A stretch of 58,781 nucleotides of DNA, taken from the NCBI RefSeq assembly GCF_001194135.2, contig NC_068991.1, positions 80,538,877 through 80,597,657 of the forward strand, written 5' to 3'. The translations under genes were made by a program, and so were the position numbers. This document shows positions 1 to 45,960 of this stretch, in pieces; the stretch's first letter is position 1; each line of letters starts with the position of its first letter. This DNA comes from Octopus bimaculoides (taxonomy: Eukaryota). The notes beneath the pieces are model-generated. The model was not told where the DNA came from. It was given only the letters and a program-made list of their open reading frames with translations, and searched no databases.

Positions 1-1746
1 GTAATGCTCGCATGATGAGTAATGCTCCCAGGTGGAGTAATGCTCGCATGATGAGTAATGCTCGTATGATGAGTAATGCTCACAGGATGAGTAATGCTCG
101 CATGATGAGTAATGCTCACATGATGAGTAATGCTCGCATGACGAGTAATGCTCGTATGATGAGTAATGCTCGCATGATGAGTAATGCTCCCAGGTGGAGT
201 AATGCTCGCATGATGAGTAATGCTCCCAGGTGGAGTAATGCTCGCATGACGAGTAATGCTCGTATGATGAGTAATGCTCCCAGGTGGAGTAAAGCTCGCA
301 TGTTGAGTAATGCTCGTATGATGAGTAATTCTCCCAGGTGGAGTAATGCTCGCATGATGAGTAATGCTTGCATGATGAGTAATGCTTGCATGATGAGTAA
401 TGCTCCCAGGTGGAGTAATGCTCGCATGATGAGTAATGCTTGTATGATGAGTAATGCTCACAGGATGAGTAATGCTCGCATGATGAGTAATGCTCCCAGG
501 TGGAGTAATGCTCGCATGATTAGTAATGCTCCCAGGTAGAGTAATGCTCGCATGATGAGTAATGCTCCCAGATGGAGTAATGCTCGCATGATGAGTAATG
601 CTTGCATGATGAGTAATGCTCCCAGGTGGAGTAATGCTCGCATGATGAGTAATGCTCGTATGATGAGTAATGCTCGCATGATGAGTAATGCTCGCATGAT
701 GAGTAATGCTCACATGATGAGTAATGCTCGCATGACGAGTAATGCTCGTATGATGAGTAATGCTCCCAGATGGAGTAATGCTCACATGATGAGTAATGCT
801 CGCATGACGAGTAATGCTCGCATGATGAGTAATGCTCCCAGGTGGAGTAATGCTCGCATGATGAGTAATGCTCCCAGGTGGAGTAATGCTCACATGATGA
901 GTAATGCTCANNNNNNNNNNNNNNNNNNNNNNNNNNNNNNNNNNNNNNNNNNNNNNNNNNNNNNNNNNNNNNNNNNNNNNNNNNNNNNNNNNNNNNNNNN
1001 NNNNNNNNNNNNNNNNNNNNNNNNNNNNNNNNNNNNNNNNNNNNNNNNNNNNNNNNNNNNNNNNNNNNNNNNNNNNNNNNNNNNNNNNNNNNNNNNNNNN
1101 NNNNNNNNNNNNNNNNNNNNNNNNNNNNNNNNNNNNNNNNNNNNNNNNNNNNNNNNNNNNNNNNNNNNNNNNNNNNNNNNNNNNNNNNNNNNNNNNNNNN
1201 NNNNNNNNNNNNNNNNNNNNNNNNNNNNNNNNNNNNNNNNNNNNNNNNNNNNNNNNNNNNNNNNNNNNNNNNNNNNNNNNNNNNNNNNNNNNNNNNNNNN
1301 NNNNNNNNNNNNNNNNNNNNNNNNNNNNNNNNNNNNNNNNNNNNNNNNNNNNNNNNNNNNNNNNNNNNNNNNNNNNNNNNNNNNNNNNNNNNNNNNNNNN
1401 NNNNNNNNNNNNNNNNNNNNNNNNNNNNNNNNNNNNNNNNNNNNNNNNNNNNNNNNNNNNNNNNNNNNNNNNNNNNNNNNNNNNNNNNNNNNNNNNNNNN
1501 NNNNNNNNNNNNNNNNNNNNNNNNNNNNNNNNNNNNNNNNNNNNNNNNNNNNNNNNNNNNNNNNNNNNNNNNNNNNNNATACTCCCAGGTGGTGTAATGC
1601 TCGCATGATGAGTAATGCTCGCATAATGAGTAATGCTCGCATGATGAGTAATGCTCGCATGATGAGTAATGCTCCCAGGTGGAGTAATGCTCGCATGATG
1701 AGTAATGCTCCCAGGTGGAGTAATGCTCACATGATGAGTAATGCTC
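1..1746. repeat. 18-bp variant minisatellite (GAGTAATGCTC + 7-nt variable part), interrupted by an N-gap at 911-1578
   Basis: Constant GAGTAATGCTC followed by GCATGAT, CCAGGTG, ACATGAT, GTATGAT, GCATGAC, ACAGGAT or CCAGATG. The 18-nt period explains the MMSNAR / EHYSSC / ALLIMR ORFs. Confidence 0.97.
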
Positions 1747-8711: not shown

Positions 8712-9931
8712 TGTGTATCCATATCTATATATATTAATAAAGACATATATATATATGTGTGTATATATATATGTGTGTGTGTGTCCAAATATATATATAT
8801 ATGTATATATATATGGACAGGGACACACACACACATATATATGTGTATGCTATAAATAAATGATCTTTCATGGCTGGAAGATGTTTATCAATGTGTTATT
8901 ATCAGTTTTATCTCCTTTAGACACTTGTTTAGAAGTGTGTGTGTGTATGCATGTGTGTGTGTGTGTCTGTGTGTGTGTGTCTGTGTGTGTGTGTGTGTGC
9001 ATGACATAAAAGCAAGGACTTATGCTTATCAGCTCCTTCTCAAGAAAACCATTAATTAGCCCCATTAATTAGCCCCATTAACACCAAGAATTGAAACAGA
9101 AAGTCAGACACCAACACACTTCTTCCAAGTTTCTTAGTTTAGCCTCTGATTAAGAAAACCTATTCTTCACAGATGTTCCAGCCATGACGGTCCTTTCAGT
9201 TTTTAAGTTTTGTGTTGTTTTTGTTTCTTCAGCACAAGTACATCTAACACTATATTACTGAATATGTTTCTTTTTTAAGATGTTAGGTTGCTTGACTTGA
9301 GAAAGATTTAATTGCTATTTCTTGCAATCATCATTGCCACCATCAGTACAACACCGCCACCATCATAAACACTACCATTGCTACAACCATCATCCCAACC
9401 ACCACCACCACCGCCACTGCCACCTTATTCATTAACTAGTAAACATAAAAATGTATATATTTTGTAAACAAGAAGAAGTTTCTATTTTTGAAGAATAACA
9501 TTTGAAACTGGGAAATATATAAATGTATGTAGACATTAATTAGTAACTCAGTAGTTCCTGCTTCATGAAAGAAAAAAAAACAAGAACAATAACAAGAAGA
9601 ACGGAAACTGCATTCTTTATTGCTTAGCAACAAAAGGGGAAAAGTTGTTTTTTTTATCTTTTTAACTTTTTTCTTTTTTCTATTTGGTTTTTGGTTTTAC
9701 ATTACAGACTGATAATCTTTCGGCTTTGGTTCACTGTTCTGATGAATTTACATCATACTTTTTTATTTCTGTTGCTGTTGGATTGTTTATTTTGTTTTGC
9801 TTTCCTTTTTTTCTTAATATAAGTAAAAAAAATTGTTAAACAAGAACACAGTTGCTGCTGTATTTTGATGTATACACAGGTTATGAGTTTGTTATCATAA
9901 GTCATATACACATGTGCTATGCGCGTGAGTA

Positions 9932-10662: not shown

Positions 10663-11240
10663 TCATCATCATCATCATCGTTTAACATCCACTTTCCATG
10701 CTGGCATGGGTTGCACAGTTTGATTGAGGACTGGCAAACCAGATGGCTGCACCAGGCTCCAATCTGATCTGGCAAAGTTTCTCCAGGTGGATGCCCTTCC
10801 TAACACCAATCACTCCGAGAGTGTAGTGGGTGCTTTTACATGCCACCTGCATGGGAGCCAGTCCGGCGGCACTGCAATGGCCATGCTTGAATGTTGTTTT
10901 TCACATGCCACCTGCACATGTGCCATTATGGCAACGCTGGCAATGATCACACTCGAATGGTGCTTTTTACATGCACTAGTCATTGCCTCCGTGAGGCCTA
11001 ATGTTCGAAGGTCATGCTTCACCACCTCATCCCAGGTCTTTCTGGGTCTACCTCTTCCACAGGTTCCCTCAACTGCTAGGCTGCGACACTTTTTCACACA
11101 GCTATCCTCATCCATTTGCACCACATGTCTATACCAGTGCAGTCGTCTCTCTTGCACACCACATTTGATGCTTCTTATGTCCAACTTTTCTCTCAAGGCA
11201 CTTACACTCTGTCATCTATGCACACTGACATTACACACAA
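10663..11240 (-). mobile_element. RTE-clade LINE 3' end with (GAT)n tail
   Basis: Translation REKLDIRSIKCGVQERRLHWYRHVVQMDEDSCVKKCRSLAVEGTCGRGRPRKTWDEVVKHDLRTLGL; same family as 54975-55915. Confidence 0.92.
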
Positions 11241-11244
11241 CTTG

Positions 11245-11672
11245 TGACTGGAGATGAAAAAAGGATTGTGTTTGAAAACGTAGTGCGAAAAAGATCCTGG
11301 AGTTTGTGTAAGGATCCCCCAAAACAGCAACCAAAGTTATGCTTTGTGTTTGGTGGGAAGGTAAAGGTGTTATTTATTATGAGCTTCTACCACAAAACCA
11401 GACCATTAATACTGATGTATGCTGTCATCAGCTGGCTAATTTGAAACAAAAAAATCAAAGAATTGAGGCTAGAGATTGCCAAAACGAAAGGGGTAGTGTT
11501 CCAACAAGACAATGCCCAACCACAAGTGTCTTTGATTAACCAAACAAACTTACATGAACTTGGTTGGGATTTCCTATGCCATCCACCACATTCTCCTGAT
11601 ATTACACCATCCGACTACCATTTGTTTTTGTCTTGATAGAACTCATTGCAAGGAAAAACATTTAATGATTTA
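11245..11672 (+). mobile_element. mariner (DD34D) transposase remnant
   Basis: VTGDEK, KVMLCVWWEGKGVIYYELLPQNQTIN and ELGWDFLCHPPHSPDITPSDYHLFLS (the YSPDLAPSDY motif), with stops and frameshifts. Confidence 0.93.
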
Positions 11673-20487: not shown

Positions 20488-21715
20488 ATTGGTTCTTTGC
20501 TGAGGCAGAGCAGAACCAAATTTTTCTTAGGTTCTAGTTTTATGTTTCATGTTGTATAAATGTAGGTTTACATGTAACATGAGAGGATGAACATGTATAA
20601 ATTATATAATAAATTTAAGAGAAGGTCGTGTAGCTTGCAGCAACACTGACTAAAATAGTTATTTTTGTGTTCGATTGATTTCTAGAGACACACAACAAAA
20701 TGCTTCTTCACAGAAACAGTCCTTCACACTTTATTGGAGCTGCTTGTCAGTTTGAGGACTCAGACCACAAAACATACCACAGCACTCAGGTCCTCTCTGC
20801 TCAACCATTTCAGAGCGCAAGAAGAATCTGAAAGTCCTTAGGGTTTCAAAAAGGTACCCTGGGCCAAATTTGTCACCAATGATAGATTGCAGATGGCACC
20901 AACTGAAGAAAGTCATATACCAGCCTTTGGCTAATGAAGTTCTTGTCAAAGTATGGCATGCATTCCTCACTGAAGATAAATGTTGCAGTTCCACAGAAAG
21001 ACCAGTTTGAAATTGCATGTAGAAGACAGGTTTGAACCGAAACAACTGAAGAAAACAATTAAGAAGCTAAGACCAGTTGAGGGTGATTAACAGGAGGATG
21101 TAGAGGGCATCTTTCTGTAGGTGAGGGCTGATTCAGTGTTTAGTGTTCCAGCCATGTAAAGTGTAGAGGCTGAGAGCAGAATGCTTATGACCCTGACATC
21201 CTAGCTGAAGATTCAGAAGGCTTTGAAACAAGGATAGAGTTTTCATCACCATCAGAAGACAAGTTTGCAACATCTTCAGGTAATTTCTCCAGTTTCTGTT
21301 TAGAGTTAAACATCATTGATGTTTATTTGACTCTCAGGAGGGGAAGGATGCAAATTTGTGAATAGAAGGATGCTGTTAAATTGATTTTGGCTGATGCTTG
21401 GCGTTCATCAATTCTAGAGGGATGAAAGGCAAAATCAGCCCCAATGGGATTTGAACTCAAGCTAGTATGGAACACAGACGTTAAATGAGGTTGATGATGG
21501 TGATGATATCAACACAAATATGAACACATCAGTTGACTGAAAGTCTGCAGAAAAAAGATTGTAAATAAAAATATACATTTTTAGATTAATAAGTTTTGGT
21601 TTTGGTCCAAATCTGTGGCACCTTCAGTGCCTTTTACTATAGCCCCAGGCTGACCGATGCCTTGGTAGTAAATCTGGAAAGTAGAAACTGTAGAATACCT
21701 GCCACCATATCAATT

Positions 21716-21746
<31 letters not shown>

Positions 21747-22095
21747 GTGTTTAATGTGATCTGGTCAGAAGGATTTTGTGGAGGCAGATTTTCTATGGCA
21801 AGATGCCCTTCCTGTAGAAAATACTCATCTCTTTCCAAAGATGGTAAACAATTCCAATGGAAGACAGGAAGCAAACAACACTGTCTGTCTTTGGAACACA
21901 GTAAAACATTGAAAATAACTATTTTGGTCAGTGTTGCTGCAAGCTACATGACCTGCTCTCACCTGTATTATATACCTTATACATGTTCCTCCACTCATGT
22001 TACATGTAAAGCTACATGAAAGCATACAAAATAAAACTAGAACCTGTGAAAACCTGGAACCTGCAGCTCTGCTTCAGCAATAAGGAACAGTCAAT
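20488..22095. mobile_element. unit bounded by about 220-bp inverted arms with a decayed coding-like interior
   Basis: 20488-20710 aligns to the reverse complement of 21865-22095 (shared blocks AGGTTCTAGTTTTAT, TTTACATGTAACATGAG, TGTAGCTTGCAGCAACACTGAC-AAAATAGTTATTTT). The inverted repeat is certain; the element class is not. Confidence 0.6.
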
Positions 22096-22668
22096 GAAAA
22101 CAGGTCAGGGTTGGCAACAGGAAGAGCATCCAGTTGTAGAAAAACTGCCTCAACAGATTCCATCTGACAAGCATTGAAAAGTGGACTTGATAATGATGAT
22201 GATCTTGGTGATAGGATTTGAAGAACAAATACAGTAAAGGTTCTGCCAAACCAGCCAGTTGAATCCATCCATGGCCTTCAAACCTGTGCTAACAACATTT
22301 CATTTAATGCCAAATGCTCCAGCAAACCATTGATTCACAAAAACCAATCAAACGACTCTTGCAGACGTTTCTGGTAAAAGAGACTCTGCTGGGGTAGACA
22401 AAATGGCAGAGAAAAAGGAACACGTCTGCCCACCTTCGTTCCTTTCATCTGGTGAAAAGGATCGACTGTTGCTGCTGCTGCTACTACTACTACTACTACT
22501 ACTGCCGCCACCACCACCACCGCTGCTGCTGTTACTGCTATTACTAGCTACTGAGAAAGCTTTTTAGGAGCCACTCAACCTGCAAGAAATAGCAGTCAAG
22601 TATCTTTCAAACTACAACAAATGAAAATGTCATTAGATGTCAGACTGATGTGTGAGTGTGTGTGCGTA

Positions 22669-22750
<82 letters not shown>

Positions 22751-22873
22751 TAGATAGAAAGACATAGATATACACACTAAGTATGGGTGTTTAGTTCACA
22801 GGTGATCTAAATGTTTAGGTACGCTAGGTAAGTGCTGTTATGGATTACTTAACGTTTGTTGTCCTCTAACAAT

Positions 22874-22917
<44 letters not shown>

Positions 22918-23124
22918 GTTGAAATTTACACACACATACAACACACAAAAGTATACATACATACTAGTACATTATGCGCGCGCGCATGTGTGCGTGCGTG
23001 CGTGTATGTGTGTGTATTCAGACGAGATAGTCATGGCTAGAAAGGATTTGATCATGGGTTCGCTTGATTAGAAACTTAGGTGACAGCAGTAACCACGAAA
23101 TTTACTAACGTTGTTATTACTCAC

Positions 23125-23282
23125 TTCTGAAATTGCAATTTTATTACTTAATCAGTGCTACATACTACTACTACTAGTAGTAGTATGTAGCAGCAGTAGT
23201 AGTAGTAGTAGTAGTAGTAGTAGCAGCAGCAGCAGCAGTAGTAGTAGCAGCAGCGATTGTGTATGAAGATGTATTCAACCAG
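23125..23282 (-). other. candidate non-coding (5'UTR) exon
   Basis: Strong acceptor tttattttttcggttctcag|CTGG and strong donor CAGAA|gtgagt. All three frames are closed and it contains a (TAG/CAG)n tract. Confidence 0.35.
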
Positions 23283-23328
23283 CTGAGAACCGAAAAAATA
23301 AACCATACACAATCCAGACATTTTACTA

Positions 23329-23812
23329 GTCACGTGCTAGGTCAGCTAGGTCATGTATGTCAAAGGTTAGGTACTATGTGAGTCACCTAGGTCATCTTGT
23401 TGTTTAACCTTCGGACAATCAATCCCCTTCGAGACCATCCTCCTCGTTTTTTTAAAATTTTATTTTTGTTGTTGATGTTTTCCGGAAGCCGGGTATCCGG
23501 GTATCCGGGATTGTATTTTGTCATGCGTCTTTCTCTTTCGAAGAATATGATCTGACACAGATTTGGCTGCTATTTCTAACAGCTCAAGCAACCACACAAA
23601 GATATTGGCTTCGACAGAAATGGAATAGATTTTGGTACTAAAAAGAAAACCTAGTTTTTTTTTTTTTCATCACAAATCTTATAGCGCCATCTGAGTCACC
23701 TAGTTAAGATAAAGGTCAAAAGTTACACTCAAACCAGAGCTAGTTAGGTCATACTTAGGTCAAAGGTTGTACTCCTTCTTTACAACTTAGGTCAAGTGCA
23801 GGTCAAAGGTTA
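23329..23812 (+). promoter_or_regulatory. cluster of nuclear-receptor response elements with AP-1 and E-box sites
   Basis: Perfect AGGTCA at 23339, 23348, 23389, 23713, 23746, 23757, 23789 and 23800, arranged as DR3, DR1 and two DR5+DR1 composites. TGAGTCA at 23379 and 23692; GTCACGTG at 23329. Confidence 0.65.
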
Positions 23813-24559
23813 TATCTCCATCTTATTTAACATGTGAGTTTAACATTGCATTGGAATTCACACTGACATCCTCTTCCTGAAGTCTGTCGGCTTCATACCT
23901 TCTCTTTAGGTCGAGAGAACCTTTACGTGGTCGTACAAGTCAGCTAAAAACAGCAGTCAAATCATAGCCTGGACCGATGTCATCTTAGATTTGCTTAGTC
24001 GGAAAAATAAAAAGTAAAATATAGAAGCAATAAAAAAAAGGACGGGCTTTGATCATAGGTCAGCTTGTTACAGGATAACCTGGGGTTAAAAAGCAAAAGA
24101 AAAACTACAAAAAAAACATACGAACTCAGGTCATCGTCACCACCACCACCACCACCACCACCACTGCTACTATTACTATCACCACTAATACTACCACTGC
24201 TACTACTATTACTACAAGTAGAGAATACTAGAGACTTCTAGATGTGCCCCCCTCCTCCACATTCTCCCTCGATTTCTACCATCATTATTACATTCAACAC
24301 ATCATTATCAGTGCCACACTCTTATTGCTAACACAACTAGCAAGATTTACCTCATCTTTACCCCCCCCCCCCNNNNNNNNNNNNNNNNNNNNNNNNNNNN
24401 NNNNNNNNNNNNNNNNNNNNNNNCCACCACCATCATTACCACTAGTAGAGTGATCGCCACCATCACCACCACCATCATCACTATCGCCAACACTGACTCC
24501 AAGAACACAGCAGACAAGTGCAATGATGACTAGATGAAACTACTACTGTGATTCTATAC

Positions 24560-24598
<39 letters not shown>

Positions 24599-24823
24599 AG
24601 TACGTAGACGCACGTATACACATAGATACACACTAGCGTACATACACAGATATACAGGCGCGACTACACACACGCACGCGCTCTCACAGTAGTCGCGCAC
24701 TTACACACACATAGTAGCACACACGCACTCACACAGATACATACGCACAGAGCTAGCACGCAGCTTGGATGAAAAGAGAGAGAGAGAGAGAGAGTGATCA
24801 GACTACTGGCCTCCCAACCATTC

Positions 24824-24935
24824 ATGCATACCTGCTCGGCTATCTTCGATGATGTGATTTCCCGGGTTCGATTGAATCACCATCGACAGCTCATGACTGA
24901 TTGGATTCTACAAACATCAGCGATTCTCTTTCTAC
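24824..24935. other. candidate first exon (either strand)
   Basis: Unique CpG-containing island between (GA)n runs. Minus donor GAGCAG|gtatgc at 24832 (ATG 24883, MVIQSNPGNHIIEDSRA). Plus donor CTAC|gtaagc at 24935 (ATG 24824, 37 open codons). CCAAT on minus at 24900-24904. Confidence 0.35.
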
Positions 24936-25886
24936 GTAAGCTTTGAAACCCGTGTTGGAATTACAAGAGAGACGGAAGGGTAGGTAAAAAAGAGAGATAA
25001 ACAGATTAATTAGCAGCTAATTGGATTGACAGACGAATGCATGATTAGATTATATTATGAATATATATCTATAAGATACGTGTAGGCAGATGGAGATAGA
25101 TAATGTTTATGTGTATATACACAGACATACAGTCAACAAGATAAACAGACACATAAATAGATAAATTACGAGAGAGAGAGAGAGAGAGAGAGAGAAATGG
25201 TAGAACCAATATGCGAACACGCAGCTAGACATACCTAAACTGATATAAGGAATATATATATACGTATAGCCGTACATATATATACTCGTACTTAATCCTA
25301 TATATACACGCGGACAGCACGGATTTACAAAACTATTTCACAAGAGAATGTTCCCTTCTAAGAAACGGTAAGTACAATTCGAGAGCCTTTTTTTTTTAAT
25401 TCAAAATTCCGTTGATATTTTCTCTACTTTTTCCACCCCGAATTCCTTCCAACGTGAACATTGCAAGAAAACATTAGTTGTTTATGAGATTTTCTCGCGC
25501 ATGTGACATATGTGAGTGTATATATGTATGTGTGGATGGAACTCAGGTGTGTATATAGAAAATGGTTTGTGTCACTGTGGCAGATATTACGTCTATATAA
25601 ATTCTACGAAATTAACTCGATTACGTAGATGTGTATTGAAGACAAATGTATAGAGATATGGGAACCACCTTTTCGGCATTTTTTTTATTACGTTTCTTTT
25701 TTCTGTATATCTGTGGGATTTTTTATAAACAGAAGCTGTGTGGATAAGATGTTATTTACCCCAGACGACGAAGACCCTCACTACTTAACTCAACCCCCCC
25801 CCCTCGTTTCACTGTGTCCGTTCCCCTTCTGGACAAACGGGTGTGTATTTGGTCGGAAGCTATGTAGATTTATATGCACCACGTAC

Positions 25887-25920
<34 letters not shown>

Positions 25921-26250
25921 ACTCTATAAACATATATATGGGTATATACAACTTTATAAACATATATGTGTATGAATATACCTGTACACGCACGTACGTG
26001 TGCGTAATACAAAAGGCAGACACAGGTGTGTACNNNNNNNNNNNNNNNNNNNNNNNNNNNNNNNNNNNNNNNNNNNNNNNNNNNNNNNNNNNNNNNNNNN
26101 NNNNNNNNNNNNNNNNNNNNNNNNNNNNNNNNNNNNNNNNNNNNNNNNNNNNNNNNNNNNNNNNNNNNNNNNNNNNNNNNNNNNNNNNNNNNNNNNNNNN
26201 NNNNNNNNNNNNNNNNNNNNNNNNNNNNNNNNNNNNNNNNNNNNNNNNNN

Positions 26251-26295
<45 letters not shown>

Positions 26296-26314
26296 CCTTA
26301 CAACTTTACTGTTT

Positions 26315-26347
<33 letters not shown>

Positions 26348-26744
26348 ACAGAATGAAGTGAAGCCAAGTCCTGTACAAGCTCACTAGTCCTAAACCTATC
26401 CACAGATAATATTACAAGTATTTGGAGTGGTTTGGCTGTTTATATATATATGAAAACTTCAGATATCGTCGTTATTGCAAGCTTGCTCGACCAAATATCG
26501 AAAATGATAAACTCCGAGTAAACGAATTGTGAAGTTTTCAGCTTCTAATAAAAGCCGATATATGTAATGAGCCAACATTTTTGAGGGGGCGGGGTATGTT
26601 ACATTATCATTGCATACATTTGTTGGTTTGATGAAGTAAATAGCGACTATGTTTCGTGTTGGTTTGGTTGAAATGTTGACTAATCACGCACCGCCACCCT
26701 CTCCCGGTCACCTTCGCTTCAGTCAAAAAACCTATGCCAGGCAA

Positions 26745-27075
26745 ATCTTTCAAGTTAAACTCGACTGTCTTAGAAAATGGGGACACACCTATTTCTCAAT
26801 GGACTCAACCTGAGAATAGACGGGATGGTCACGGTTAGATTATCTGTTCGACCAAAACTGAGCTGGGGGCCAAAGAACAAGGTGGGAATATCTACATGGT
26901 TAACCGGTTTGCTAGAAACAGCAAACAAATTCTGCCAAGTCACACCTTAGAAAAGAAGGGCGTGTTAATACGGTTGTCAATATAATTGTCAATGGACTGT
27001 GCCTATGAATAGACGCGATGGTCATAGATGGAATATCTGCTCAAATTAAACTGAGCTGGGGCCAAACAACGAAGG
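26745..27075 (+). repeat. head-to-tail copies of a dispersed SINE-like repeat (GCTAGAAA(T/C)AGC ... GGGATGGTCACGG ... CTGAGCTGGGG)
   Basis: Two tandem diverged copies; further copies at about 28555-28900 and 30100-30470, and reverse copies at about 12060-12480. Confidence 0.7.
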
Positions 27076-27223
27076 AACTATCGAGCGGGAGCTAAAGAAT
27101 GAAGCAGGAACCTTTATGAGCAACGCTTCGAAGCATCGGTTTGAGAGGGATCGTGTGTGTGTGTGTGTCGTTTGTAAAAAACATAAATCCGAAAGAAGAG
27201 GCACACTCTAAGATGTAGAGCAG

Positions 27224-27255
<32 letters not shown>

Positions 27256-27329
27256 GATATCAGCCAAATCACAACTCTGCAATCTTAGAAAAGGTAACCG
27301 ATTAAAAAATAATTTATTTTATTGTTTCT

Positions 27330-27966
27330 ACTGGTTGGGACCATCTTTTTAGTGAAATGTATTATCCGAAGATTTAATAATATTTTATGAAGAACATTTT
27401 CCTTAATTTCGAGTTGTTGAGCAGGTCGGGTGCGCTTTGTAGTTCTTGATGGTCACGCTGATTGGACTAAGCGGTTTACATCACTATTGCCTCGATTAGG
27501 GCCGATGGGAGGATGTGCAATATATATATTGCGTGGAGCTCGAAAAATTCGTTGTAACTCATAAAATGTAAAACTGTTCGCATTTATACTGAAGACATAC
27601 TTTGTCGTGCTTTGGGTCATCGTGTCCTGGTAGAGTGATAGGGATACTAGCGTAACTAGGGGGAGCGGTAGGGGCGGTCTGCTGTAGGCAATTTGTGTTT
27701 TTTTGTGGGATTCGGGGGTGGCAAACGGAAGGGCTGCCCCAGGCGGCACACATTCTAGCTACGCTAGTGGATAGGGGTATCGTTGAGACATGCGACTTGT
27801 CTCGGTCATCGAAGAACTGGTGGACTCCAGGCCTGACCACAACTAACTTCTTTCGGAAGGCATCAATCACAGAAGAGAGAGAGAGAGAGAATCGACCCCA
27901 CTCTTGGATTGATACTTTAGTTATCGCCCGCAAAGGATGAAAGTTACTGTTACAAGCTGCTGCCAA
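27330..27966 (-). mobile_element. possible LINE remnant (ORF1 end / APE endonuclease start), CR1/L2-like
   Basis: After MITE removal the frame is open for about 130 codons. KYVFSINANSF..YELQ and VTIKNYKAH resemble the N-terminus of APE domains (NaxSl.nK..EL; IxNYxxxRxDR). Confidence 0.35.
27645..27769. mobile_element. hAT-type MITE, same family as 2661-2832
   Basis: TIRs TACTAGCGTAACTAG ... CTAGCTACGCTAGTG; 8-bp TSD GATAGGGA / GATAGGGG; internal sequence matches 2661-2832 in reverse orientation. Confidence 0.9.
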
Positions 27967-29299
27967 CTGTGATCTGCGGTCTTTGATAATGATTGTCGCT
28001 TTCTAATGGAGAAGGAAGAATGCAAAGAAACGAGTGATTGATTTTTCCCCAATCCATTCCTTACTCTTTTCCATTCCCATAGAGTAAGGACAGCAACTGG
28101 CTAAGGAGGGCGAGGGGCAGTCTGCTTCGGTCGATGCTTTTATGGAGGTGGCACTTTTGGGTCGACTGTATAAGCTTGCATAGGCTTTGGCGTGGGGGAA
28201 TGGTAGAGCGACGCAGAACTCAAAGACTGCTTCGGGTGGTAGCTAGATTGTCTACCCTGACCAGAGTTCGGAGACGAATGTAAAAATTTCCCAAGTTGAC
28301 TTGGGTGGGATTTGAAACCTAAGCGCAGAAAGCAATTTATCCGGCCCTCCACCTTATCGAAAACTAGCATTCATACTTTGTAACACTGAATAGGCTGGAC
28401 AGTTGGCTCCGGTCGTCTGCCGTGTTGTAGTTGTAGCTTCTATAAAATGCACCATGAAGTTCCGGGTATTGGTCATATGTCTGTGAATTCTTATGTCAGA
28501 CATTTTATCGGAATACGACAAATAAGTCACACAAACGAAGGAACTTTTACACAGCCAGGTAGTTTGCTAGAAACAGCAGCCAGATACTGCCAAGTCATAT
28601 CCTACTCTCTTAGACGTCAATGTTGTTGTCAATGGACACTCCCTAGGACAGGTTGGTCATGTTTAAAATATCTGCTCGACTAAAACTGGGCTCAGATCAG
28701 ACAACAAAGCAGGAGCGTTTATGTAGTCGCTCGACTTGCTAGACATAGTAGCCAAATCATACCCAACTATCTTAGAAAAGAACATATGACATAATGTGGT
28801 CGTAGATAGATTGTGCCGATGGGGAAGGAAAAAAAAAAGGACGGGATGGTCACGGTTAGGATATCTGCTTGTTCAGAGCTGAAATCGGAGTTAAACAACA
28901 TAGCGACCTCTATGTGGCCTCTTGAGACGCTAGAAATAGCAATAATTTTTCCCTTATGTCTATCTCACACCTCTGTTGTTTGTTTTTATTTTTTGTTTGT
29001 TTCTTTTTAACGGTAAGGGCGCTTTGCTTAATGTGATCCGAAATATAAAATGGCCAGGATTGGAATCGTCGTGTGCGCTTTTGCAGTGCTTCGATGACAC
29101 CAGAGAAAGTCTTCCCCATTAAATTCGTTCTGATTTTCTCAGTGTTTTCTTGGCAGAGATAAAATCTGGGTGGTTCGTCATTGCCTTCGCGAACAGAAGT
29201 GCCGCTGGCCCACAAGGAGCTCATCCGCCCTTCTGGAATACCTTTGATTATCAGCACTCTGCTGCTTGATCAGGGTTGACCTGGGTTAAACAACACGCC

Positions 29300-29460
29300 C
29301 AGGCGCGGTCCCAGGAATTTTTTGAAGGGAGGGCACAAGGTCAGAAAAAGAATACTATTCCAGGAGAAAAGAGGGTAACAACATTATTTAGAAGGGCGCA
29401 CTTCTTTTCTTGAGGAGGGCACCTGTCCCTCAGCACCCCTCGCCCCTTGGGTCCGCCATG
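29300..29460. mobile_element. GC-ended MITE
   Basis: Imperfect TIRs CAGGCGCGGTCCCAGG ... CCTTGGGTCCGCCATG; no clear TSD. Confidence 0.55.
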
Positions 29461-31009
29461 ACGCTAGACTAGTAGTTTCCACCGGCGTCTTGTAAAATGT
29501 TTCTTCTTGGGGTTATTATAGAAGTACGAACAAAAAAGGCGATAGAATGACGGACTCAGTGGGTGAGACGGAATCCACTACGGACGTAGTAACCCTTGTT
29601 GGATAGGGGTTAGGGTTACAGAAATACCGAAATCTCTCGGTGAATTTTAGAATAGGGAAGGAATGTACTTTTTCCCTTTCCTCCGGGAAAAGAAAAGCGA
29701 ACTAATCTGGAGGTGAGGATGGGGGGGGGGCAAAAATGTTAAAATATGAAATTTTTTGAAATAAATAATAAATTCTTCGGAATATATTTCTCGTTATATA
29801 AAACAGAGGAATACATAACAACAAAATAAAAACTATGCTGTTCGTTGCATTTTCCCTCCGCTATGAAGTAGTAACAGTTGGCTTTTCCAGAAGTTCTCTC
29901 CATTGTTCAACACGTGGCATTTGAGATATATTCAAAAGGTGGGAATTGAGTCGCTGACAAAGGGTTTTTTAAAAATTTTCTTTTGGTGGAAAAGGAAAGG
30001 AAGAAGAAGAAAAAAACACACGAAAATATTGGGTTCTCATGACTGGAATGCTTTTGATCATATCAAGGTTCACAACTATAGCAATCCCTTTATGGTCATT
30101 CAGCTTGCAAGAAATAGTGACCAAATCTCCTTCAAATCATGTCCTACCGTATTATACAGGGAAGACATATTGGATCATGTTCTTTGATACACTCAGTGTG
30201 CGTGTGTGTGTCGGTATGGTCACATGTGGAATGCCCTTTGATAAGAGGTTTGCTCAGTCAACAATTAAAACGACCCCCCCCTCACCCACATGGTCATCGG
30301 TCCGCTTGAATTAGCACTAAGTCGCTTTCAAGACATAATATCCTATCGTTATAAAAGAAGGGCACGTAGTTTCTGGATCCGATATATCTGAAAGAAAGAA
30401 CAACAATCAGGATGGTCACATTTGGAATACTTTCTGATAAAAGCTTTGCTCACTCAGCATTGACAACAACGACAAGACTCTTCACTGAGTAGCGGATTAA
30501 AGGATTAGCAATATCTTCAGGGTAAATCTTTTACTATTACACCCACCTCCAAACTCTGATATCAGTGGACTGTCACCAACTCAAGAAGGAAAAGATCAAA
30601 GAATTAGGTGGTTGCTTCTGTAAAAGAATTTCTTTTACATTTTTTGATCAACCAATTCCGCGCCCTTTTCCGGCAAATTTTGACTTTTATACTTGTCTCA
30701 TGAAACGAATGAAATAGTATAAATTTGCCGTGTTTGGTTACATCGAGCGTTTAAAATTTTTAGGGTCGACTTTTTGCCCTTCGTCATTCCTGTGGTCGAT
30801 AGAATTGGTAACCGACACAACTCATCCATACCTCCTAGATATGTTTTTACAGTCCATGTTAGAATAAATTTATTATCGTGTCCGGAGGGCGCGGTTGACA
30901 TTGGGTGACATCAGAACTTACAGTCAAGTGGCTACTATTTAAAACGATATTATTTGACTAAATCTGCCCTACCGTCGTTGCTATCAAATAATTATTGAAT
31001 TTCTTTGAC

Positions 31010-32060
31010 CCCAAGGCAGTGAGTTGGCATGCCACAAATAAGTACCAGTTGAATATTGAGGGTCGATGTAATCGACTAAACACTCCTGGACCCACAAATT
31101 CTAGGCCTTGTGCTTCTAGGAGAAAGAATTATTATTAACGAAATGGCAGAATCGTTAGGATGCCGAACAAACCGCTTGGCGACATTCACTCCGGCTTTAC
31201 GGAGTCAATAACAACAAAGTATCAATCAAGTACTGAGATCAATGTAATCGATCTACCCCTCCCCTCAAAACTGTTGGCCTTGTGCCAGAATTAGAAAGGA
31301 TCATAATTGTCATCATTATATTATTGCCAACATAACGAGATTCATTACTGTTTCTGTCGTTTATTCATTTTGGTAAAGCATAAAAGCCATAACATCTCAA
31401 GCTTATCATTCATTATTAAAATACTGAATAGACATTTCTTCCTTGGTGGGGGTGGGAGATTGATTGCATTTGTCCACGTACGTGACTGATACTTTATGTA
31501 TCGACCTAAAGAATGACAACAAATGAAGAAACGACTGGCATCGTCGATAGAGCGTCGCAAAAATATACGCCACGGTATTTGATTTGGTTCCTCAGGTTCT
31601 GAGTTCAAAAACCGTTCATAAAAGAAAGTAGCAATCAAGTAGTGGAGTTGATGGCATCGATTCATACCTTTCCAAAGATCGCCCGTACTTCTTCTGGCTT
31701 TTTACGTTCTGAGTTCAAATCCTGCCGTGGTTAACTTTATCTACCCCCACCACCACTATTCCCCGTCTCCGGGTCAATAAATTAGAGTACCAGTGGAGCT
31801 GAGATCGATTAAATTCCTCCCTAACAACACTTTGGATCTAATTAAGAAACCATTATCATCATTATTATTAGCATCATCAAGACGGCGAAGAGCTGGCAGA
31901 ATGGTTAACACAGCGGATAAAACGTTCCGAGTTCAAATTCTGTCCAGATCGACTTTACTTTTCATCCTTCTGGGATCGATGAAATATATACCAGTTGAAC
32001 ACTGGGGTCGATGTTCCCCTAAGTTTCTGGTCTTTTGCTTATAATAGAAAGAATTATTAT
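31010..32060 (+). mobile_element. cluster of about 5 diverged Meta/MESC-domain SINE copies, same orientation
   Basis: Repeated TGGCAGAAT(C/G)GTTA, GTTC(T/C)GAGTTCAAA, AGTACCAGT, GGGGTCGAT and AGAAAGAATTATT blocks. Confidence 0.8.
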
Positions 32061-32839
32061 TAATGTAATCTAAATTAAATAAAAATGACCCTTCCATTCC
32101 ACCGATTATTTTGCTTTCTGTTTTTTTCTCGTTTACTTTAGTTTTCTTTTGTTGTCAAGAAATTGGTTTCTGGTGAAATCGACTGGAATTTTACGAAATG
32201 AAGCTTTCTTCGCTTTCATAGACTGCAACACTCTTGTTTCTGTTATAATAGTATTTCCTTTGCGATGTCGTTCTTTAACCTGCTCCCACTATCCCGGTCT
32301 ATTCATTGCTCTTCCTACAAGAACAACAACAGCAACAACACGTGTGTTTAACTGTAAATATCGATTTCGTCATACTGTAAGCCACAAGGCCTCGAGTTTG
32401 GGAGAGAAAAAGAAGAGAGAGAAAGAACTAACATACTCTTAGTCTTCAATTATAATTGGCATTCGCATTTCGTATGCTTTATGGGGATATTAAACTAACA
32501 TTAGCTCTGTCGTGGATAACCAAGTCAAATCCCTTGGGAATTTTATATATCTTAACATTTTACAGTATCAAGTATCACAAAACTCACAGAATGCAAATAA
32601 CTGTTTCCATTGATATATTCTATTAGACAGCTCTCTGTTACACACACACACACACACGGAGCAACATTTACCATGGTATAACTACAGATTAGGTCCCCGA
32701 TCCTCTCTCCATCAACTTTGTTTCTCTATGGTTTACCTTTTAAAAATGCGTGTTTTTAAGTAAAATCTCGAAGAGATATATTTTTGAGGCTGTGAATTAT
32801 AATTATGTTAATAAAATTCAATAAAAGAAACCTAGAGGA

Positions 32840-33050
32840 GGAGTTCCGGTTCGCTATTCGTCGCGCCCGCCTAGATTTTGTTCCAACTAATATCTGCGAC
32901 TGTTTCAGTATTTTTCACATTTTTGTCTCTGATCTATAAATTTGAAACTTTGACATTACGTAACCGACAGTCACGAGAACGTATTTCCTCAAAATGGCAT
33001 TAAAGAAATATGCATTTTAAAGAGACTTATGAGAAAACAATGTCAGGTGC
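32840..33050 (+). promoter_or_regulatory. possible promoter/TSS region
   Basis: Local CpG peak TTCCGGTTCGCTATTCGTCGCGCCCGCC, TTACGTAA at 32956 and YY1-like AAAATGGC at 32991. Could instead be a non-autonomous DNA transposon. Confidence 0.25.
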
Positions 33051-33399
33051 GAAGGAGAATCGTCCGAAACTCATTTTTTTTCTTTTTTTTTTCAAGCTAA
33101 TCGTAATGTAGAGCCTCGAAAATGTATCTGCGAAATTTCGTTAAAATAACTGTTAGAAAATTCTTAGAAATTTGGAGAAACAAAGTCGGGTGAGGCACCA
33201 AACTATAGTTATACCACTACTACTTTTGTCTGGTTTACGATATACTTTTAAACAGTAACGGATCCCTAATAAATATAATTAATGTGACCCCCTACTTCCA
33301 CAATTAATACTGGACCCAGTACTTGATTGTTGCTTTATCTCCAGTTCAGTATATTCTTTTAAATCGTAACGAAATGAGTTATTATTTATTTTAGTCAAA

Positions 33400-34140
33400 G
33401 AATTGTCACTTAGAGACACGGAATTTCGTTCTGGTTCTTTATGTTCTGAGTTCAAATACCACCGAAGTCAACATTGCTTTTTATGTTTTTGTGGTCGATA
33501 AAATAAAGTACCGGTCAAGTAATGATATCCCAAATTTCTGCTCTTGTACGTAATTTAGAAACAGTTAAAGAGCGGTGGAATGACAGAATCGTTAGAGCAT
33601 CGAAAAATACTTTTTGTGGTATTTCTTCCAGTTCTTTGCGTTCTGAGTTCAAATCCCTTTCGAGATCGATCAAATAAAGTACAAGTCAATTGCTCAGGTG
33701 AAGGGTATCCACTAACATTGACATCCACCCCTCAAAATTGCGAGCGTTGAGTCTAAATTAGAAACAATTATTTGGAGCAGAGAAGTGGTGGCGCACAAAA
33801 ATATTTTGTGGTGTTTACTTAAAGCTTTCTCCGTTCAGAGTTCAAACTCGGTCGAGGTCAACCTTTCCTTTTAAACCACGGGGTTGAGTTTGTGGTCTCG
33901 TTAGAAACGTCAGAGGTGATAATAATCATTGCCAAGGATCAGTAGAGCGTCTGGCAAAATGCCTTGCGCTATTCCTTCCGACTCTTTACGTTCTGAGTTC
34001 AAATCCCGCAGCGGTCAACTTAGCCTTTCATCCTTTTGGGGTCGATAAAATAAAGTACGAGAAAGTTGATGGTATCCTCTAACACCTACCCCGATAAACT
34101 ACTGATTCGCCTTGTATCGTATCAGAAATTATTGCATAGC
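33400..34140 (+). mobile_element. four abutting Meta/MESC-domain SINE copies
   Basis: GTTCTGAGTTCAAA-type B-box recurs at about 33443, 33640, 33832 and 33989, each followed by GTCGAT..AATAAAGTAC-like domains. Confidence 0.8.
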
Positions 34141-34225
34141 TGTTTCCTGTATTCTTCTGATAATAAATGTCAAGGGAAGAAGAAAACAAAAGCAAGAAAA
34201 ACAAACATTGAGGGACAGAGAGAGA

Positions 34226-34274
<49 letters not shown>

Positions 34275-34577
34275 ACTGTGTACGTGTGAGATTGAAAGAG
34301 TGATCGTGTACTACAAAAACGATGTAGAATTCATCTACTTAAATCAATAAGCTTCAAACCAACCATTATTTTGTTGTTGCTACCTGTTTCTATCATTTTC
34401 TATCTGTCTGTCTTTCTTCACTTTTTATATAACCTCCATGAAGAATTTATTGTTTCTTGGCAAAACTTTTGTATCTTGTCTGATCTTGTTTCTTTGCTTA
34501 TGTCAAGGAGACAATTGTCACACAGAAGCACAGGTTAATGACTTCTTTGAACGTGCACAAATTGTGTGAGTGTGTAT

Positions 34578-34629
<52 letters not shown>

Positions 34630-35032
34630 ATAGATAGGTAGATGAATAGATAGACAGACAGACAGATAGATAGATATTAATGATAGTTTTATGTCAAATT
34701 ATATATGGAAACGTTTTTACATTAAACTAAACCTTTTGGTAAAGTACGTATTTATGAATCTATAAGTTTGTATATGAGTGTGTGTATTAATGTTTGTTTT
34801 TATGTCAAATTGTCTATAAAAACAATTCGACGTTCAACTTTTTAGTAGAGAACATGTTCGTTGACCTTTAGAAAGAAATGAAAAGGTTGATAGCGACTTC
34901 GAAGTTTCATCATACTTGTCATCAAGCTGTCACTTTATTTTTTTCCTTGTAAAAGTTAATGTGTATGCAGGTATACAAACACACATGTATGTATGCTCTG
35001 CCTGCTGGAAATAGCAACCAAATCTCCAAATC

Positions 35033-45099: not shown

Positions 45100-45960
45100 C
45101 TATGAAGCGCCGGTCGCAATGTCTGCACATCATCAACCACGGCATGCCTAGACCTCCATTTAGTGGGTGTTGACAGCAAATGGATCATTTAACCATCGGA
45201 ACGCTTCCCTTCCACAAGAAGCGGAAGTGTATGCGTTCCAGTCTGGTGACGGTAAAGTCGGGACAAGGCACGATGGTCAGACGGTAATCGATGATGAATG
45301 TGATGTACATGTTTGCCACCTCCACCCAACTTTTAGGGATAGCTTCCTCTCAGACAATTACTGGGCAAGAGTAGCCACCCTAGTTGCTATTTTGCCCCAG
45401 TTCTTCTCCATTTGGCGGTCCAGACAAAACCATACTCTGAACACTTTAACCAGTCCGTCAGTCCAGTGTCCCACGATGGAGATGCTATTGGACAGCATGG
45501 GCTTGCTTCTCCAGGTGCCGAGCCGCAAGCCCACTGACTTTTCCCGGTTAATTTTTGCTCCCGTACCGCTTCGTATTCTTTTAGTGTCTCGCCGACCAGG
45601 TCGATGTGCTTGTAGCATCACTATGACAATGATGTTGTCAGCGTATGCAGACATGCTCCTCCAACATCCCAGCTCTCATGGGATGCCCCTCAGCGTCACC
45701 AGCTTCTGCAGTAGTGGCTCAAGCGTCAATATATACAGAAGCAACGAGAGGGGGCATCCTTGACGAACCGAATGCATGATGTTAAATGGTCTGGATAAAT
45801 GACCATTTACGCGAACTACCGAGCGATGCCGCTGTATAAGGAAGCATTCCAACCGCGGAAGATGGGACCGAAACCAGCCGCTTCAAGGACAGTTTCCAAG
45901 TAGTGATGGTCTACCTCACCGAAAGGTTTTGATTGATCCAAATTGATCAGCACCCCACAA
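45100..45960 (-). mobile_element. Tx1/L1-clade LINE reverse transcriptase fragment
   Basis: LINLDQSKPFGEVDHHYLETVLEAAGFGPIF, VRQGCPLSLLLYILTLEPLL, AYADNIIV and GAKINREKSVGLRLGTW. Confidence 0.92.

What the first reader, a model, noticed from the sequence alone, without database searches (positions are those of the whole stretch)
23329..23812. Dense, patterned nuclear-receptor element cluster with a duplicated DR5+DR1 composite
Seen: eight perfect AGGTCA hexamers, all on one strand, in about 480 bp, where a rough base-composition estimate gives about 0.1 per strand. They are ordered. Module 1 has GTCACGTG (23329), DR3 AGGTCAgctAGGTCA (23339-53), DR1 ATGTCAaAGGTTA (23357-69) and TGAGTCAcctAGGTCA (23379-94). 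Module 2 has TGAGTCAcctag again (23692), DR1 AGGTCAaAAGTTA (23713-25), then twice AGGTCA-N5-AGGTCA-A-AGGTT(G/A) (23746-69, 23789-812). The two composites keep their hexamers while the 5-nt spacers differ (tactt vs agtgc), which suggests constraint rather than a decaying tandem repeat. Six of the eight sites are TAGGTCA. Established: DR5 is the RAR/RXR element, DR1 binds RXR/HNF4/COUP-TF/TR2-4, and T-extended half sites resemble ROR/HR3 and Rev-erb/E75 monomer sites (here 4/5 matches to the WAWNT extension). Inference: a retinoid, lipid-sensing or clock-linked enhancer, probably in intron 1 of a minus-strand gene.
Basis: partly seen in the sequence, partly recalled or inferred. Interest (0 to 1): 0.72.

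Follow-up and report, generated by a model that had tools for sequence, protein, structure and literature searches.

The report
Periodic nuclear-receptor half-site array, split by repeat
A short stretch of octopus non-coding DNA carries four evenly spaced copies of a three-part nuclear-receptor binding motif, later split by an inserted repeat. It may be a hormone- or lipid-receptor docking site, but it could also be a fragment of a mobile element, and nothing here shows that it functions.

Summary
There are eight perfect AGGTCA on the + strand in 23339-23805, where 0.135 are expected.

The sites are not eight independent events:
- One (23389) is created at the junction with an inserted ~300-bp repeat (23391-23688). 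This repeat belongs to a ~198-bp family with about 20 copies in the window and is flanked by a 14/15 direct repeat.
- Two come from an exact 9-bp duplication.
- With the insert removed, the rest form four units whose DR1 cores start 43/44/43 bp apart. Each unit reads TAGGTCA-N5(3)-AGGTCA-A-AGGTTA.

Between units the half-site columns are 87% identical. All other columns are 28% identical, which is about what unrelated sequence would give. Uniform decay of a tandem repeat is therefore rejected, and something has preserved the hexamers.

Selection on a host regulatory element would explain this. So would selection inside a mobile element before it landed here. I could not separate the two, because no genome-wide copy number or orthologous locus could be obtained.

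The array lies on the shoulder of a ~10-kb CpG-undepleted domain in an Octopus genome. No gene was identified.

Best reading, at about 0.4: a homotypic docking array for DR1/DR5-binding nuclear receptors. It is a new member of a known kind and of moderate interest.

The parts
23327..23369 (+). Unit 1 of the array ('module 1'). It has five half-site-like hexamers: TAGTCA 23327-32 (degenerate), AGGTCA 23339-44, AGGTCA 23348-53, ATGTCA 23357-62 and AGGTTA 23364-69. It contains an exact 9-bp tandem duplication, GCTAGGTCA x2, at 23336-53, and the E-box-like GTCACGTG at 23329-36.
   Evidence: Sequence read. TRF row 23336-23353, period 9, 100%. DR1 core match with 1 mismatch.
23376..23390 (+). Left copy of a 15-bp direct repeat, ATGTGAGTCACCTAG. 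It contains the AP-1-like TGAGTCA. I read it as the left target-site duplication of the insertion.
   Evidence: the repeat finder D7, 93%. A 15-mer repeat with at most 1 mismatch arose in 18 of 1000 shuffles of 23255-24137.
23389..23394 (+). AGGTCA number 3. It is formed across the junction: 'AG' from the flanking repeat plus 'GTCA' from the start of the inserted element.
   Evidence: Other copies of the repeat family carry GGTC or GTC at the aligned position. The family HMM alignment starts at 23396-23397. The pre-insertion reading is CCTAG|TTAAG.
23391..23688 (.). Inserted repeat element of about 298 bp. Positions 23397-23605 are one full unit of a ~198-bp interspersed, often tandem repeat family. 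Positions 23606-23688 are unassigned apart from a T run. Read on the minus strand, the unit ends in an A-rich tail next to the left flanking repeat, which suggests a minus-strand retroposon.
   Evidence: Iterated nhmmer found 19 further matches (E from 8e-44 to 0.012) in the window. This copy scores E=1.5e-35 over model positions 2-197. The strand and retroposon reading is my inference from the consensus.
23689..23703 (+). Right copy of the 15-bp direct repeat, ATCTGAGTCACCTAG. This is the 'TGAGTCAcctag again' of the finding.
23701..23725 (+). Unit 2 core: TAGTTAA-gataa-AGGTCAAAAGTTA. The first half site is degenerate and the DR1 has 1 mismatch.
23745..23769 (+). Unit 3 core: TAGGTCA-tactt-AGGTCAAAGGTTG (DR5 + DR1).
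   Evidence: D2.
23788..23812 (+). Unit 4 core: TAGGTCA-agtgc-AGGTCAAAGGTTA (DR5 + DR1). This is the consensus form.
   Evidence: D2.
23918..24008 (-). Partial copy (tail part) of the same ~198-bp repeat family in inverted orientation, about 105 bp to the right of the array.
   Evidence: nhmmer E=1.6e-08, model positions 122-197.
24424..34750 (.). Context: a CpG-undepleted domain (o/e 0.89) flanked by strongly depleted DNA (o/e 0.30 and 0.31). The array sits on its left shoulder, where o/e is about 0.65.
   Evidence: The reading as a germline-unmethylated stretch between or at the start of methylated gene bodies is an inference from PMC9476566.

Best explanation
What is shown: the region holds one old, periodic array of four ~43-bp units. 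Each unit carries three same-strand half sites, TAGGTCA-N5 (N3 in unit 1)-AGGTCA-A-AGGTTA, that is, a DR5 or DR3 overlapping a DR1. The array was later cut between units 1 and 2 by a ~300-bp repeat element that brought a 12-15-bp flanking duplication. One extra AGGTCA came from that junction and one from a recent 9-bp duplication.

What is inferred: the half sites have stayed nearly identical while all other positions have become as different as unrelated sequence, and the 43/44/43-bp spacing (about four helical turns) has been kept. So the hexamers themselves have been under constraint. The most likely reason is that the array is a homotypic docking platform for nuclear-receptor dimers that read direct repeats. 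Candidates are the DR1 binders (RXR homodimer, HNF4, COUP-TF, TR2/4) on the four AGGTCA-A-AGGTTA cores, and possibly RAR/RXR-type dimers on the two perfect DR5s. It would act as a cis-regulatory module at the edge of an unmethylated, probably promoter-bearing domain. Which receptor binds, which gene is regulated, and whether it activates or represses are all unknown.
For: - The cluster is far beyond chance.
- The composite core occurs nowhere else in the 58.8 kb, even with 3 mismatches. All four matches to the DR1 core lie in the array, which argues against a high-copy family.
- DR1 starts are 43, 44 and 43 bp apart once 23391-23703 is removed.
- Half-site columns are 102/117 identical pairwise against 38/136 for all other columns. 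Every pair gives Fisher p of 0.002 or less, and no column shuffle out of 20000 reached the observed block. Uniform neutral decay of a tandem repeat is rejected.
- The array predates a diverged repeat insertion, so it is not a very young slippage product.
- The array shows no similarity to that repeat family.
- It lies on the shoulder of a sharply bounded CpG-undepleted domain. In Octopus bimaculoides, methylation marks the bodies of constitutively expressed genes and spares promoters (PMC9476566).
- In vertebrates, regions bound by RAR/RXR in vivo typically hold composite elements with more than two half sites (PMC4446430).
Against: - There is no orthologous sequence, no genome-wide copy number and no accessibility or binding data.
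- Selection acting inside a mobile element before insertion would give the same pattern of conserved cores and free spacers.
- The 3' half of every DR1 departs from RGKTCA at position 5 (AGGTTA, AAGTTA or AGGTTG).
- One strand only and a fixed period are what repeats look like.
- The neighbourhood is full of microsatellites and fragments of the 198-bp family.
- A 300-bp insertion inside the array was tolerated.
- No exon or gene was found nearby.
- The core columns were chosen after seeing the data.
Confidence: 0.4

Rival explanations
1. The array is part of a low- or middle-copy mobile element. It could be subterminal transposase-binding repeats of a DNA transposon, or the repeated enhancer of an LTR or other element promoter. 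The short cores would have been maintained by selection on the element lineage, and this copy is an inert fragment that may still bind receptors by accident.
For: - Short motifs repeated on one strand, with a regular period and unrelated spacers, are the anatomy of subterminal or enhancer repeats (established knowledge).
- This fully explains the core versus non-core contrast without any host function.
- The region is densely populated by repeats.
- Element-borne nuclear-receptor sites are well known, for example Alu DR2 (PMC1785376) and HNF4 sites in Alu (PMC3252374).
- Unrelated eukaryotic metagenome contigs carry their own one-strand AGGTCA arrays, including AGGTCA-N5-AGGTCAAAGGTTA (L001-L003, L009).
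Against: - There is no second copy of the core or flanks in the window, nor in 11 kb of O. bimaculoides DNA.
- No terminal inverted repeat, LTR or flanking duplication bounds the array.
- There is no inverted TGACCT cluster that would mark the other end.
- The metagenome hits share nothing beyond the motif.
- The sample searched would detect only very high copy numbers.
Confidence: 0.3
2. The array is a neutral minisatellite-like product of nested slippage (7-, 9-, 11- and 43-bp steps) on an AGGTCA-containing seed. It has no function, and the cores look conserved because they were copied recently or repeatedly.
For: - An exact 9-bp tandem duplication at 23336-53 shows that slippage is active here.
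- Autocorrelation peaks at lags 11, 25, 36 and 43/44.
- All sites lie on one strand.
- The locus is surrounded by microsatellites.
- AGGTCA's clustering rank falls among the satellite words.
Against: - Slippage copies spacers together with cores, yet non-core columns are at the identity expected of unrelated sequence (28%) while cores are at 87%.
- TRF does not detect a 43-bp array even at score 30.
- The tails are T/C-rich and do not look like decayed AGGTCA copies.
- The array is older than a diverged repeat insertion.
Confidence: 0.2
3. The hexamers are a chance accumulation.
For: None beyond the fact that the window-wide count of AGGTCA is ordinary.
Against: The expectation is 0.135 per 480 bp per strand. 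Poisson P(>=8) is about 2e-12, and 300 simulations never exceeded 5.
Confidence: 0.01

Closest known systems
Direct-repeat hormone response elements of nuclear receptors (the DR1-DR5 rule), in particular composite elements with more than two half sites found in regions bound by RAR/RXR in vivo (PMC4446430)
   Same: The half sites are AGGTCA-type, in one orientation, with 1-nt and 5-nt (once 3-nt) spacers. Three half sites share a central hexamer, and there are several such elements within about 200 bp.
   Different: No binding or activity is shown. The 3' half of each DR1 is AGGTTA or AGGTTG rather than RGKTCA. The elements are strictly periodic copies of one unit rather than a mixed cluster. 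The organism is a cephalopod, and I do not know of any defined receptor response element in cephalopods (from my own knowledge, not searched exhaustively).
Nuclear-receptor sites carried by mobile elements: Alu DR2 retinoic acid response elements (PMC1785376) and HNF4alpha sites in Alu (PMC3252374)
   Same: Consensus half-site repeats arise through repeat biology rather than point mutation, and they could be bound by receptors wherever they land.
   Different: Alu sites are present in many thousands of copies with recognisable element flanks. Here no second copy and no element boundaries were found, although only about 70 kb of Octopus DNA could be searched.
Minisatellites or higher-order short tandem repeats with a conserved core
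   Same: The array lies on one strand, has nested periods (7, 9, 11, 43 bp), includes an exact recent 9-bp duplication, and sits in a microsatellite-rich neighbourhood.
   Different: Unit homology outside the 20 core columns is at chance level, and TRF does not call the array. Decay is very uneven across columns.
Subterminal repeats of DNA transposons (for example the hexamer repeats of Ac/Ds or the 12-bp motifs of En/Spm; from my own knowledge)
   Same: A short motif is reiterated at short intervals with unrelated spacers.
   Different: No terminal inverted repeat, no partner end with inverted motifs and no transposase-related sequence lies nearby.

Membership tests
DR1 nuclear-receptor response element (RXR/HNF4/COUP-TF/TR2-4 class) | Two RGKTCA hexamers in direct orientation separated by 1 nt | tested here: inconclusive
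   There are four instances, at 23357, 23713, 23757 and 23800. The 5' half is perfect AGGTCA in three and ATGTCA in one. The 3' half is AGGTTA, AAGTTA, AGGTTG and AGGTTA, so position 5 is T rather than C in all four. The spacing is exact.
DR1 nuclear-receptor response element (RXR/HNF4/COUP-TF/TR2-4 class) | Bound by a receptor dimer and confers receptor-dependent transcription | not testable with these tools
   Needs EMSA, DAP-seq or ChIP and reporter assays with octopus receptors.
DR5 retinoic acid response element (RAR/RXR) | Two RGKTCA hexamers in direct orientation separated by 5 nt | tested here: met
   AGGTCAtacttAGGTCA at 23746-62 and AGGTCAagtgcAGGTCA at 23789-805 are perfect. A degenerate third, AGTTAAgataaAGGTCA, lies at 23702-18.
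DR5 retinoic acid response element (RAR/RXR) | Retinoid-dependent activation through RAR/RXR | not testable with these tools
ROR/HR3 or Rev-erb/E75 monomer site | A/T-rich 5' extension (WAWNT) directly upstream of AGGTCA | tested here: not met
   The five bases upstream, read, are GTGCT, CAGCT, CACCT, GATAA, TAGTT, TACTT, AACTT and AGTGC. None matches 5/5 and three match 4/5. T at position -1 is present in 6 of 8.
Tandem repeat / minisatellite | Head-to-tail copies whose whole units are detectably homologous | tested here: inconclusive
   Core starts are 43/44/43 bp apart, and units 3 and 4 are 79% alike over 28 nt. Non-core columns are only 28% identical overall. TRF at score 30 reports only the 9-bp x2 repeat.
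Interspersed multi-copy element (the array itself) | Further copies elsewhere in the genome with shared flanks | tested here: inconclusive
   None was found in the 58.8-kb window, in about 11 kb of real sequence from O. bimaculoides CM046630.1, or in the 11 metagenome loci. This sample can detect only very high copy numbers. No whole Octopus genome was searchable.
Interspersed multi-copy element (the array itself) | Element boundaries: terminal inverted repeats or LTRs, and a target-site duplication around the array | tested here: not met
   The repeat finder on 21500-25500 returns only microsatellite-driven repeats.
~198-bp interspersed/tandem repeat family (the insert 23391-23688) | Significant homology to many other copies | tested here: met
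   19 further matches (E from 8e-44 to 0.012) were found in the window, several of them tandem. This copy scores E=1.5e-35 over model positions 2-197.
~198-bp interspersed/tandem repeat family (the insert 23391-23688) | Insertion signature: a flanking direct duplication | tested here: met
   A 14/15 direct repeat lies at 23376-90 and 23689-703. Such a repeat arose by chance in 18 of 1000 shuffles. The left copy abuts the start of homology. The right copy lies 83 bp past the end of detectable homology, so the right boundary is less certain.

The most novel reading that the evidence does not exclude
The array is a long-maintained cephalopod nuclear-receptor hub. Four helically phased DR5+DR1 composites, about 43 bp or four turns apart, would be kept by selection at the border of an unmethylated promoter domain and would survive a repeat insertion. 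To my knowledge it would be the first cis-regulatory receptor element defined in a cephalopod. It would also be a clean natural example of an enhancer born by tandem duplication and then constrained only at its binding cores.
Probability: 0.3. Interest if true: 0.55.

Novelty: new member of a known kind. Interest (0 to 1): 0.35.

Why it matters
If the array is a host regulatory element, it gives a concrete, testable entry point into nuclear-receptor signalling in cephalopods, where receptor genes are known but target elements are not. It would also show how tandem duplication followed by core-only constraint can build a homotypic enhancer.

If it is a fragment of a mobile element, it adds to the picture, known from Alu, that repeats seed genomes with receptor sites.

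The practical lesson is that a dense, orderly cluster of perfect sites on one strand has to be dissected for duplication and insertion history before the sites are counted as independent evidence.

Tried and rejected
1. Looked for a second copy in the window by blastn and by pattern search with mismatches. None was found for the array; only the central ~210 bp is repeated.
2. Searched for a gene or exon.
   - Pfam on all stop-free segments of 55 aa or more covering about 18.5-35 kb, and on the non-transposon segments of about 1-18.7 kb, gave no family.
   - Rfam and tRNA scans were empty.
3. Tried to reach orthologues or other copies through the protein collection.
   - Exact look-up of 10 nearby ORFs found none on record.
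   - A homology search with translated segments of 23250-23940 gave nothing at E<=10.
   - Two long concatenated queries failed: one was too long and one timed out.
4. Scanned metagenome contigs for TAGGTCA-N5-AGGTCAAAGGTT. This returned 11 loci, none homologous beyond the motif.
5. Tried to sample Octopus DNA through transposon proteins.
   - The LINE query gave only short or unrelated ENA contigs.
   - The mariner query gave one O. bimaculoides locus, half of it Ns.
   - A UniRef-only octopus protein was not on record.
   - This was too little DNA for a copy-number estimate.
6. Tested whether the array derives from the 198-bp family. It does not: the local alignment scores are no better than those of shuffled sequence.
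7. Looked for TIR, LTR or target-site-duplication boundaries around the array. Only microsatellite repeats appeared.
8. Searched the literature for the repeat consensus and the DR1 core as text strings. There were no hits.

Full report
OBSERVATION

AGGTCA occurs 33 times in the window on both strands, against 31.6 expected from shuffles, so the hexamer is not enriched overall. Eight of the 18 plus-strand copies fall between 23339 and 23805, and two more lie at 24057 and 24128. The expected number per strand per 480 bp is 0.135. In 300 first-order Markov simulations the largest one-strand cluster was usually 2 and never more than 5. The cluster is real.

When every hexamer is ranked by its largest one-strand cluster, AGGTCA is 69th of 3761, and the 60 most clustered hexamers printed are micro- or minisatellite words. 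That is a warning that local copying is involved.

ANATOMY

Three layers of history can be read.

(i) A recent duplication. TRF reports an exact 9-bp tandem duplication, GCTAGGTCA x2, at 23336-53. It accounts for one of the eight sites.

(ii) An insertion.
- A 15-bp direct repeat, AT[G/C]TGAGTCACCTAG, stands at 23376-90 and 23689-703 (D7). Only 18 of 1000 shuffles of the region give any such repeat.
- Between the two copies, 23397-23605 is one full unit of a ~198-bp repeat family. Iterated nhmmer finds 19 further matches (E from 8e-44 to 0.012) in the window, several in tandem (28543-29054, 26738-27073, 30080-30451). Partial inverted copies lie at 22558-22611 and 23918-24008. This copy scores E=1.5e-35.
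- I read 23391-23688 as an insertion with a 12-15-bp target-site duplication.
- It follows that the second 'TGAGTCAcctag' is simply the duplicate flank. AGGTCA at 23389 is made by the junction: 'AG' from the flank plus the 'GTCA' that starts the element. Other family copies have GGTC or GTC at the aligned position.
- The 83 bp between the end of family homology and the right flank could not be assigned, so the right boundary is less secure than the left.

(iii) The underlying array.
- With 23391-23703 removed, the sequence is continuous. It contains four units whose DR1 cores begin 43, 44 and 43 bp apart. Each unit reads TAGGTCA-N5-AGGTCA-A-AGGTTA. Unit 1 has a 3-nt spacer and unit 2 has a degenerate first hexamer.
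- The composite core with up to 3 mismatches, and the DR1 core with up to 2, occur nowhere else in the window.

CONSTRAINT TEST

I aligned the four units and compared columns.
- The 20 half-site columns are 102/117 identical in pairwise comparisons (87%).
- All other columns are 38/136 identical (28%), about what unrelated sequence would give.
- Every pair is individually significant (Fisher p from 7e-7 to 0.002). No column shuffle out of 20000 reached the observed block.

The test has two limits.
- The core columns were picked after seeing the data, although the effect is far too large for that to matter.
- The test cannot say where the constraint acted. Selection on this locus would produce the pattern. 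So would selection on a mobile element's own binding sites before this copy was deposited.

The array shows no similarity to the 198-bp family. No terminal repeats, LTRs or duplications bound it.

CONTEXT

- SINE-derived peptides from the window match Octopus bimaculoides proteins. The best mariner match is an O. bimaculoides SETMAR-like gene on CM046630.1. A 21-kb locus from that chromosome shares the window's SINE families at 71-93% identity, median 81%. The window is from Octopus or a close relative.
- No Pfam domain was found in stop-free segments of 55 aa or more covering about 18.5-35 kb, or (leaving out the transposon-derived segments) about 1-18.7 kb. The rest of the window (about 35-58.8 kb) was only looked through by eye, not scanned. 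No tRNA or Rfam family was found either. No gene could be named.
- CpG o/e is 0.30 for 1-24400, 0.89 for 24424-34750 and 0.31 for 34751 to the end. It rises from 0.11-0.17 at 19.5-22.5 kb to about 0.65 across the finding.
- In O. bimaculoides, methylated CpGs cluster on the bodies of constitutively expressed genes and are scant in promoters, transposons and intergenic DNA (PMC9476566). By inference, both flanks lie in germline-methylated gene bodies, and the 10-kb domain is an unmethylated promoter or intergenic stretch with the array at its edge.
- This fits 'first intron of a minus-strand gene'. It fits equally well the 3' end of a plus-strand gene.

MECHANISM

As DNA, the array offers four DR1-type sites on roughly the same helical face, two perfect DR5s and one DR3. 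DR1 is read by RXR homodimers, HNF4, COUP-TF, TR2/4 and PPAR/RXR, and DR5 by RAR/RXR (established knowledge; summarised in PMC1785376 and PMC4446430). In mouse cells, regions bound by RAR/RXR usually hold composite elements with more than two half sites, and these have been proposed as hubs for several receptors (PMC4446430).

I therefore take a homotypic receptor docking array as the most likely function, at about 0.4.

Several points weigh against it:
- The 3' half of each DR1 has T instead of C at position 5.
- No site carries a full WAWNT extension, so the ROR/Rev-erb reading fails its own criterion.
- The neighbourhood is repeat-rich.
- A 300-bp insertion was tolerated inside the array.

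RIVALS

- A fragment of a low-copy mobile element whose cores were kept by element-level selection (0.3). Alu DR2 and Alu HNF4 sites are the known precedent (PMC1785376, PMC3252374). Unrelated eukaryotic metagenome contigs carry their own one-strand AGGTCA arrays (L001-L003, L009), though these share no homology with the window.
- A neutral product of nested slippage (0.2). It is supported by the 9-bp duplication and the lag structure. It is contradicted by the chance-level non-core identity and by the array's age relative to the insertion.
- Chance is excluded.

WHAT COULD NOT BE DONE

No Octopus genome could be searched by DNA. The protein-based routes to other loci gave only about 11 kb of usable O. 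bimaculoides sequence. The two tests that would decide the matter, genome-wide copy number and conservation at the orthologous locus, therefore remain open.

VERDICT

The motif grammar and the uneven conservation are real. Two of the eight sites are by-products of an insertion and a recent duplication. The two 'modules' are one interrupted array. Function, receptor identity and gene context are unproven.
- The finding is a new member of a known kind, either a response-element cluster or a repeat-borne set of receptor sites.
- Interest is moderate.

Noticed in passing
window 23397-23605 (+), 28543-29054 (-), 26738-27073 (-), 30080-30451 (-), 51333-51491 (-), 9170-9327 (+) and others: A ~198-bp repeat family has about 20 copies in 58.8 kb, often as tandem dimers or trimers. 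Its consensus starts TTTGTTGTTTGGCCCGAGCTCAG and ends GGCTGCTATTTCTAGCAGATCGAGTAACCACATAAAGGTATT. Its class was not identified, and text searches of the consensus in the literature gave nothing.
   Followed up: partly
window 24424-34750: A sharply bounded CpG-undepleted domain (o/e 0.89) lies between strongly depleted flanks (0.30 and 0.31). It probably marks an unmethylated promoter or intergenic stretch between methylated gene bodies. It also holds most of the tandem 198-bp units and several tRNA-like SINE copies, so young repeats may contribute to the signal.
   Followed up: partly
L001 7520-7710 (also L002, L003; JGI contigs Ga0209149_1000396, Ga0209338_1058119, Ga0209339_1025021): An unrelated eukaryotic metagenome contig carries its own one-strand array, with up to eight AGGTCA within about 300 bp. 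It has five near-contiguous copies and then AGGTCAactcaAGGTCAaaggttaAGGTCA. L009 ends in an AGGTCAAAGGTTAGGTTA minisatellite. Such arrays recur in other animals, and their nature is unknown.
   Followed up: partly
window 1-909 and 1594-1746: An 18-bp satellite (GTAATGCTCGCATGATGA)n lies on both sides of an assembly gap. It is likely one array of about 1.7 kb.
   Followed up: no
window 23168-23226 vs 24164-24221, and 22465-22552: Trinucleotide microsatellites (TAG/CAG and their complement CTA/CAC) bracket the roughly 880-bp segment that holds the array, in inverted orientation (81% complementary). A third block lies 700 bp to the left. A perfect palindromic (TC)n(TA)n(AG)n lies at 22667-22760.
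   Followed up: no
window 24124-24185 vs 48099-48157: An 89% identical 60-bp stretch, ACTCAG(G)TCAT.GT...(CAC)n(CTA)n, is present at both places. It is a microsatellite with a shared flank, possibly the tail of another repeat. It carries the tenth AGGTCA (24128).
   Followed up: no
window 11229-11633 (+) and 45361-45882 (-): There are remnants of a degenerate mariner-type transposase (best match O. bimaculoides SETMAR-like, 55%) and of a LINE reverse transcriptase. The LINE piece is 77% identical in DNA to a 717-bp ENA metagenome contig, L012.
   Followed up: partly
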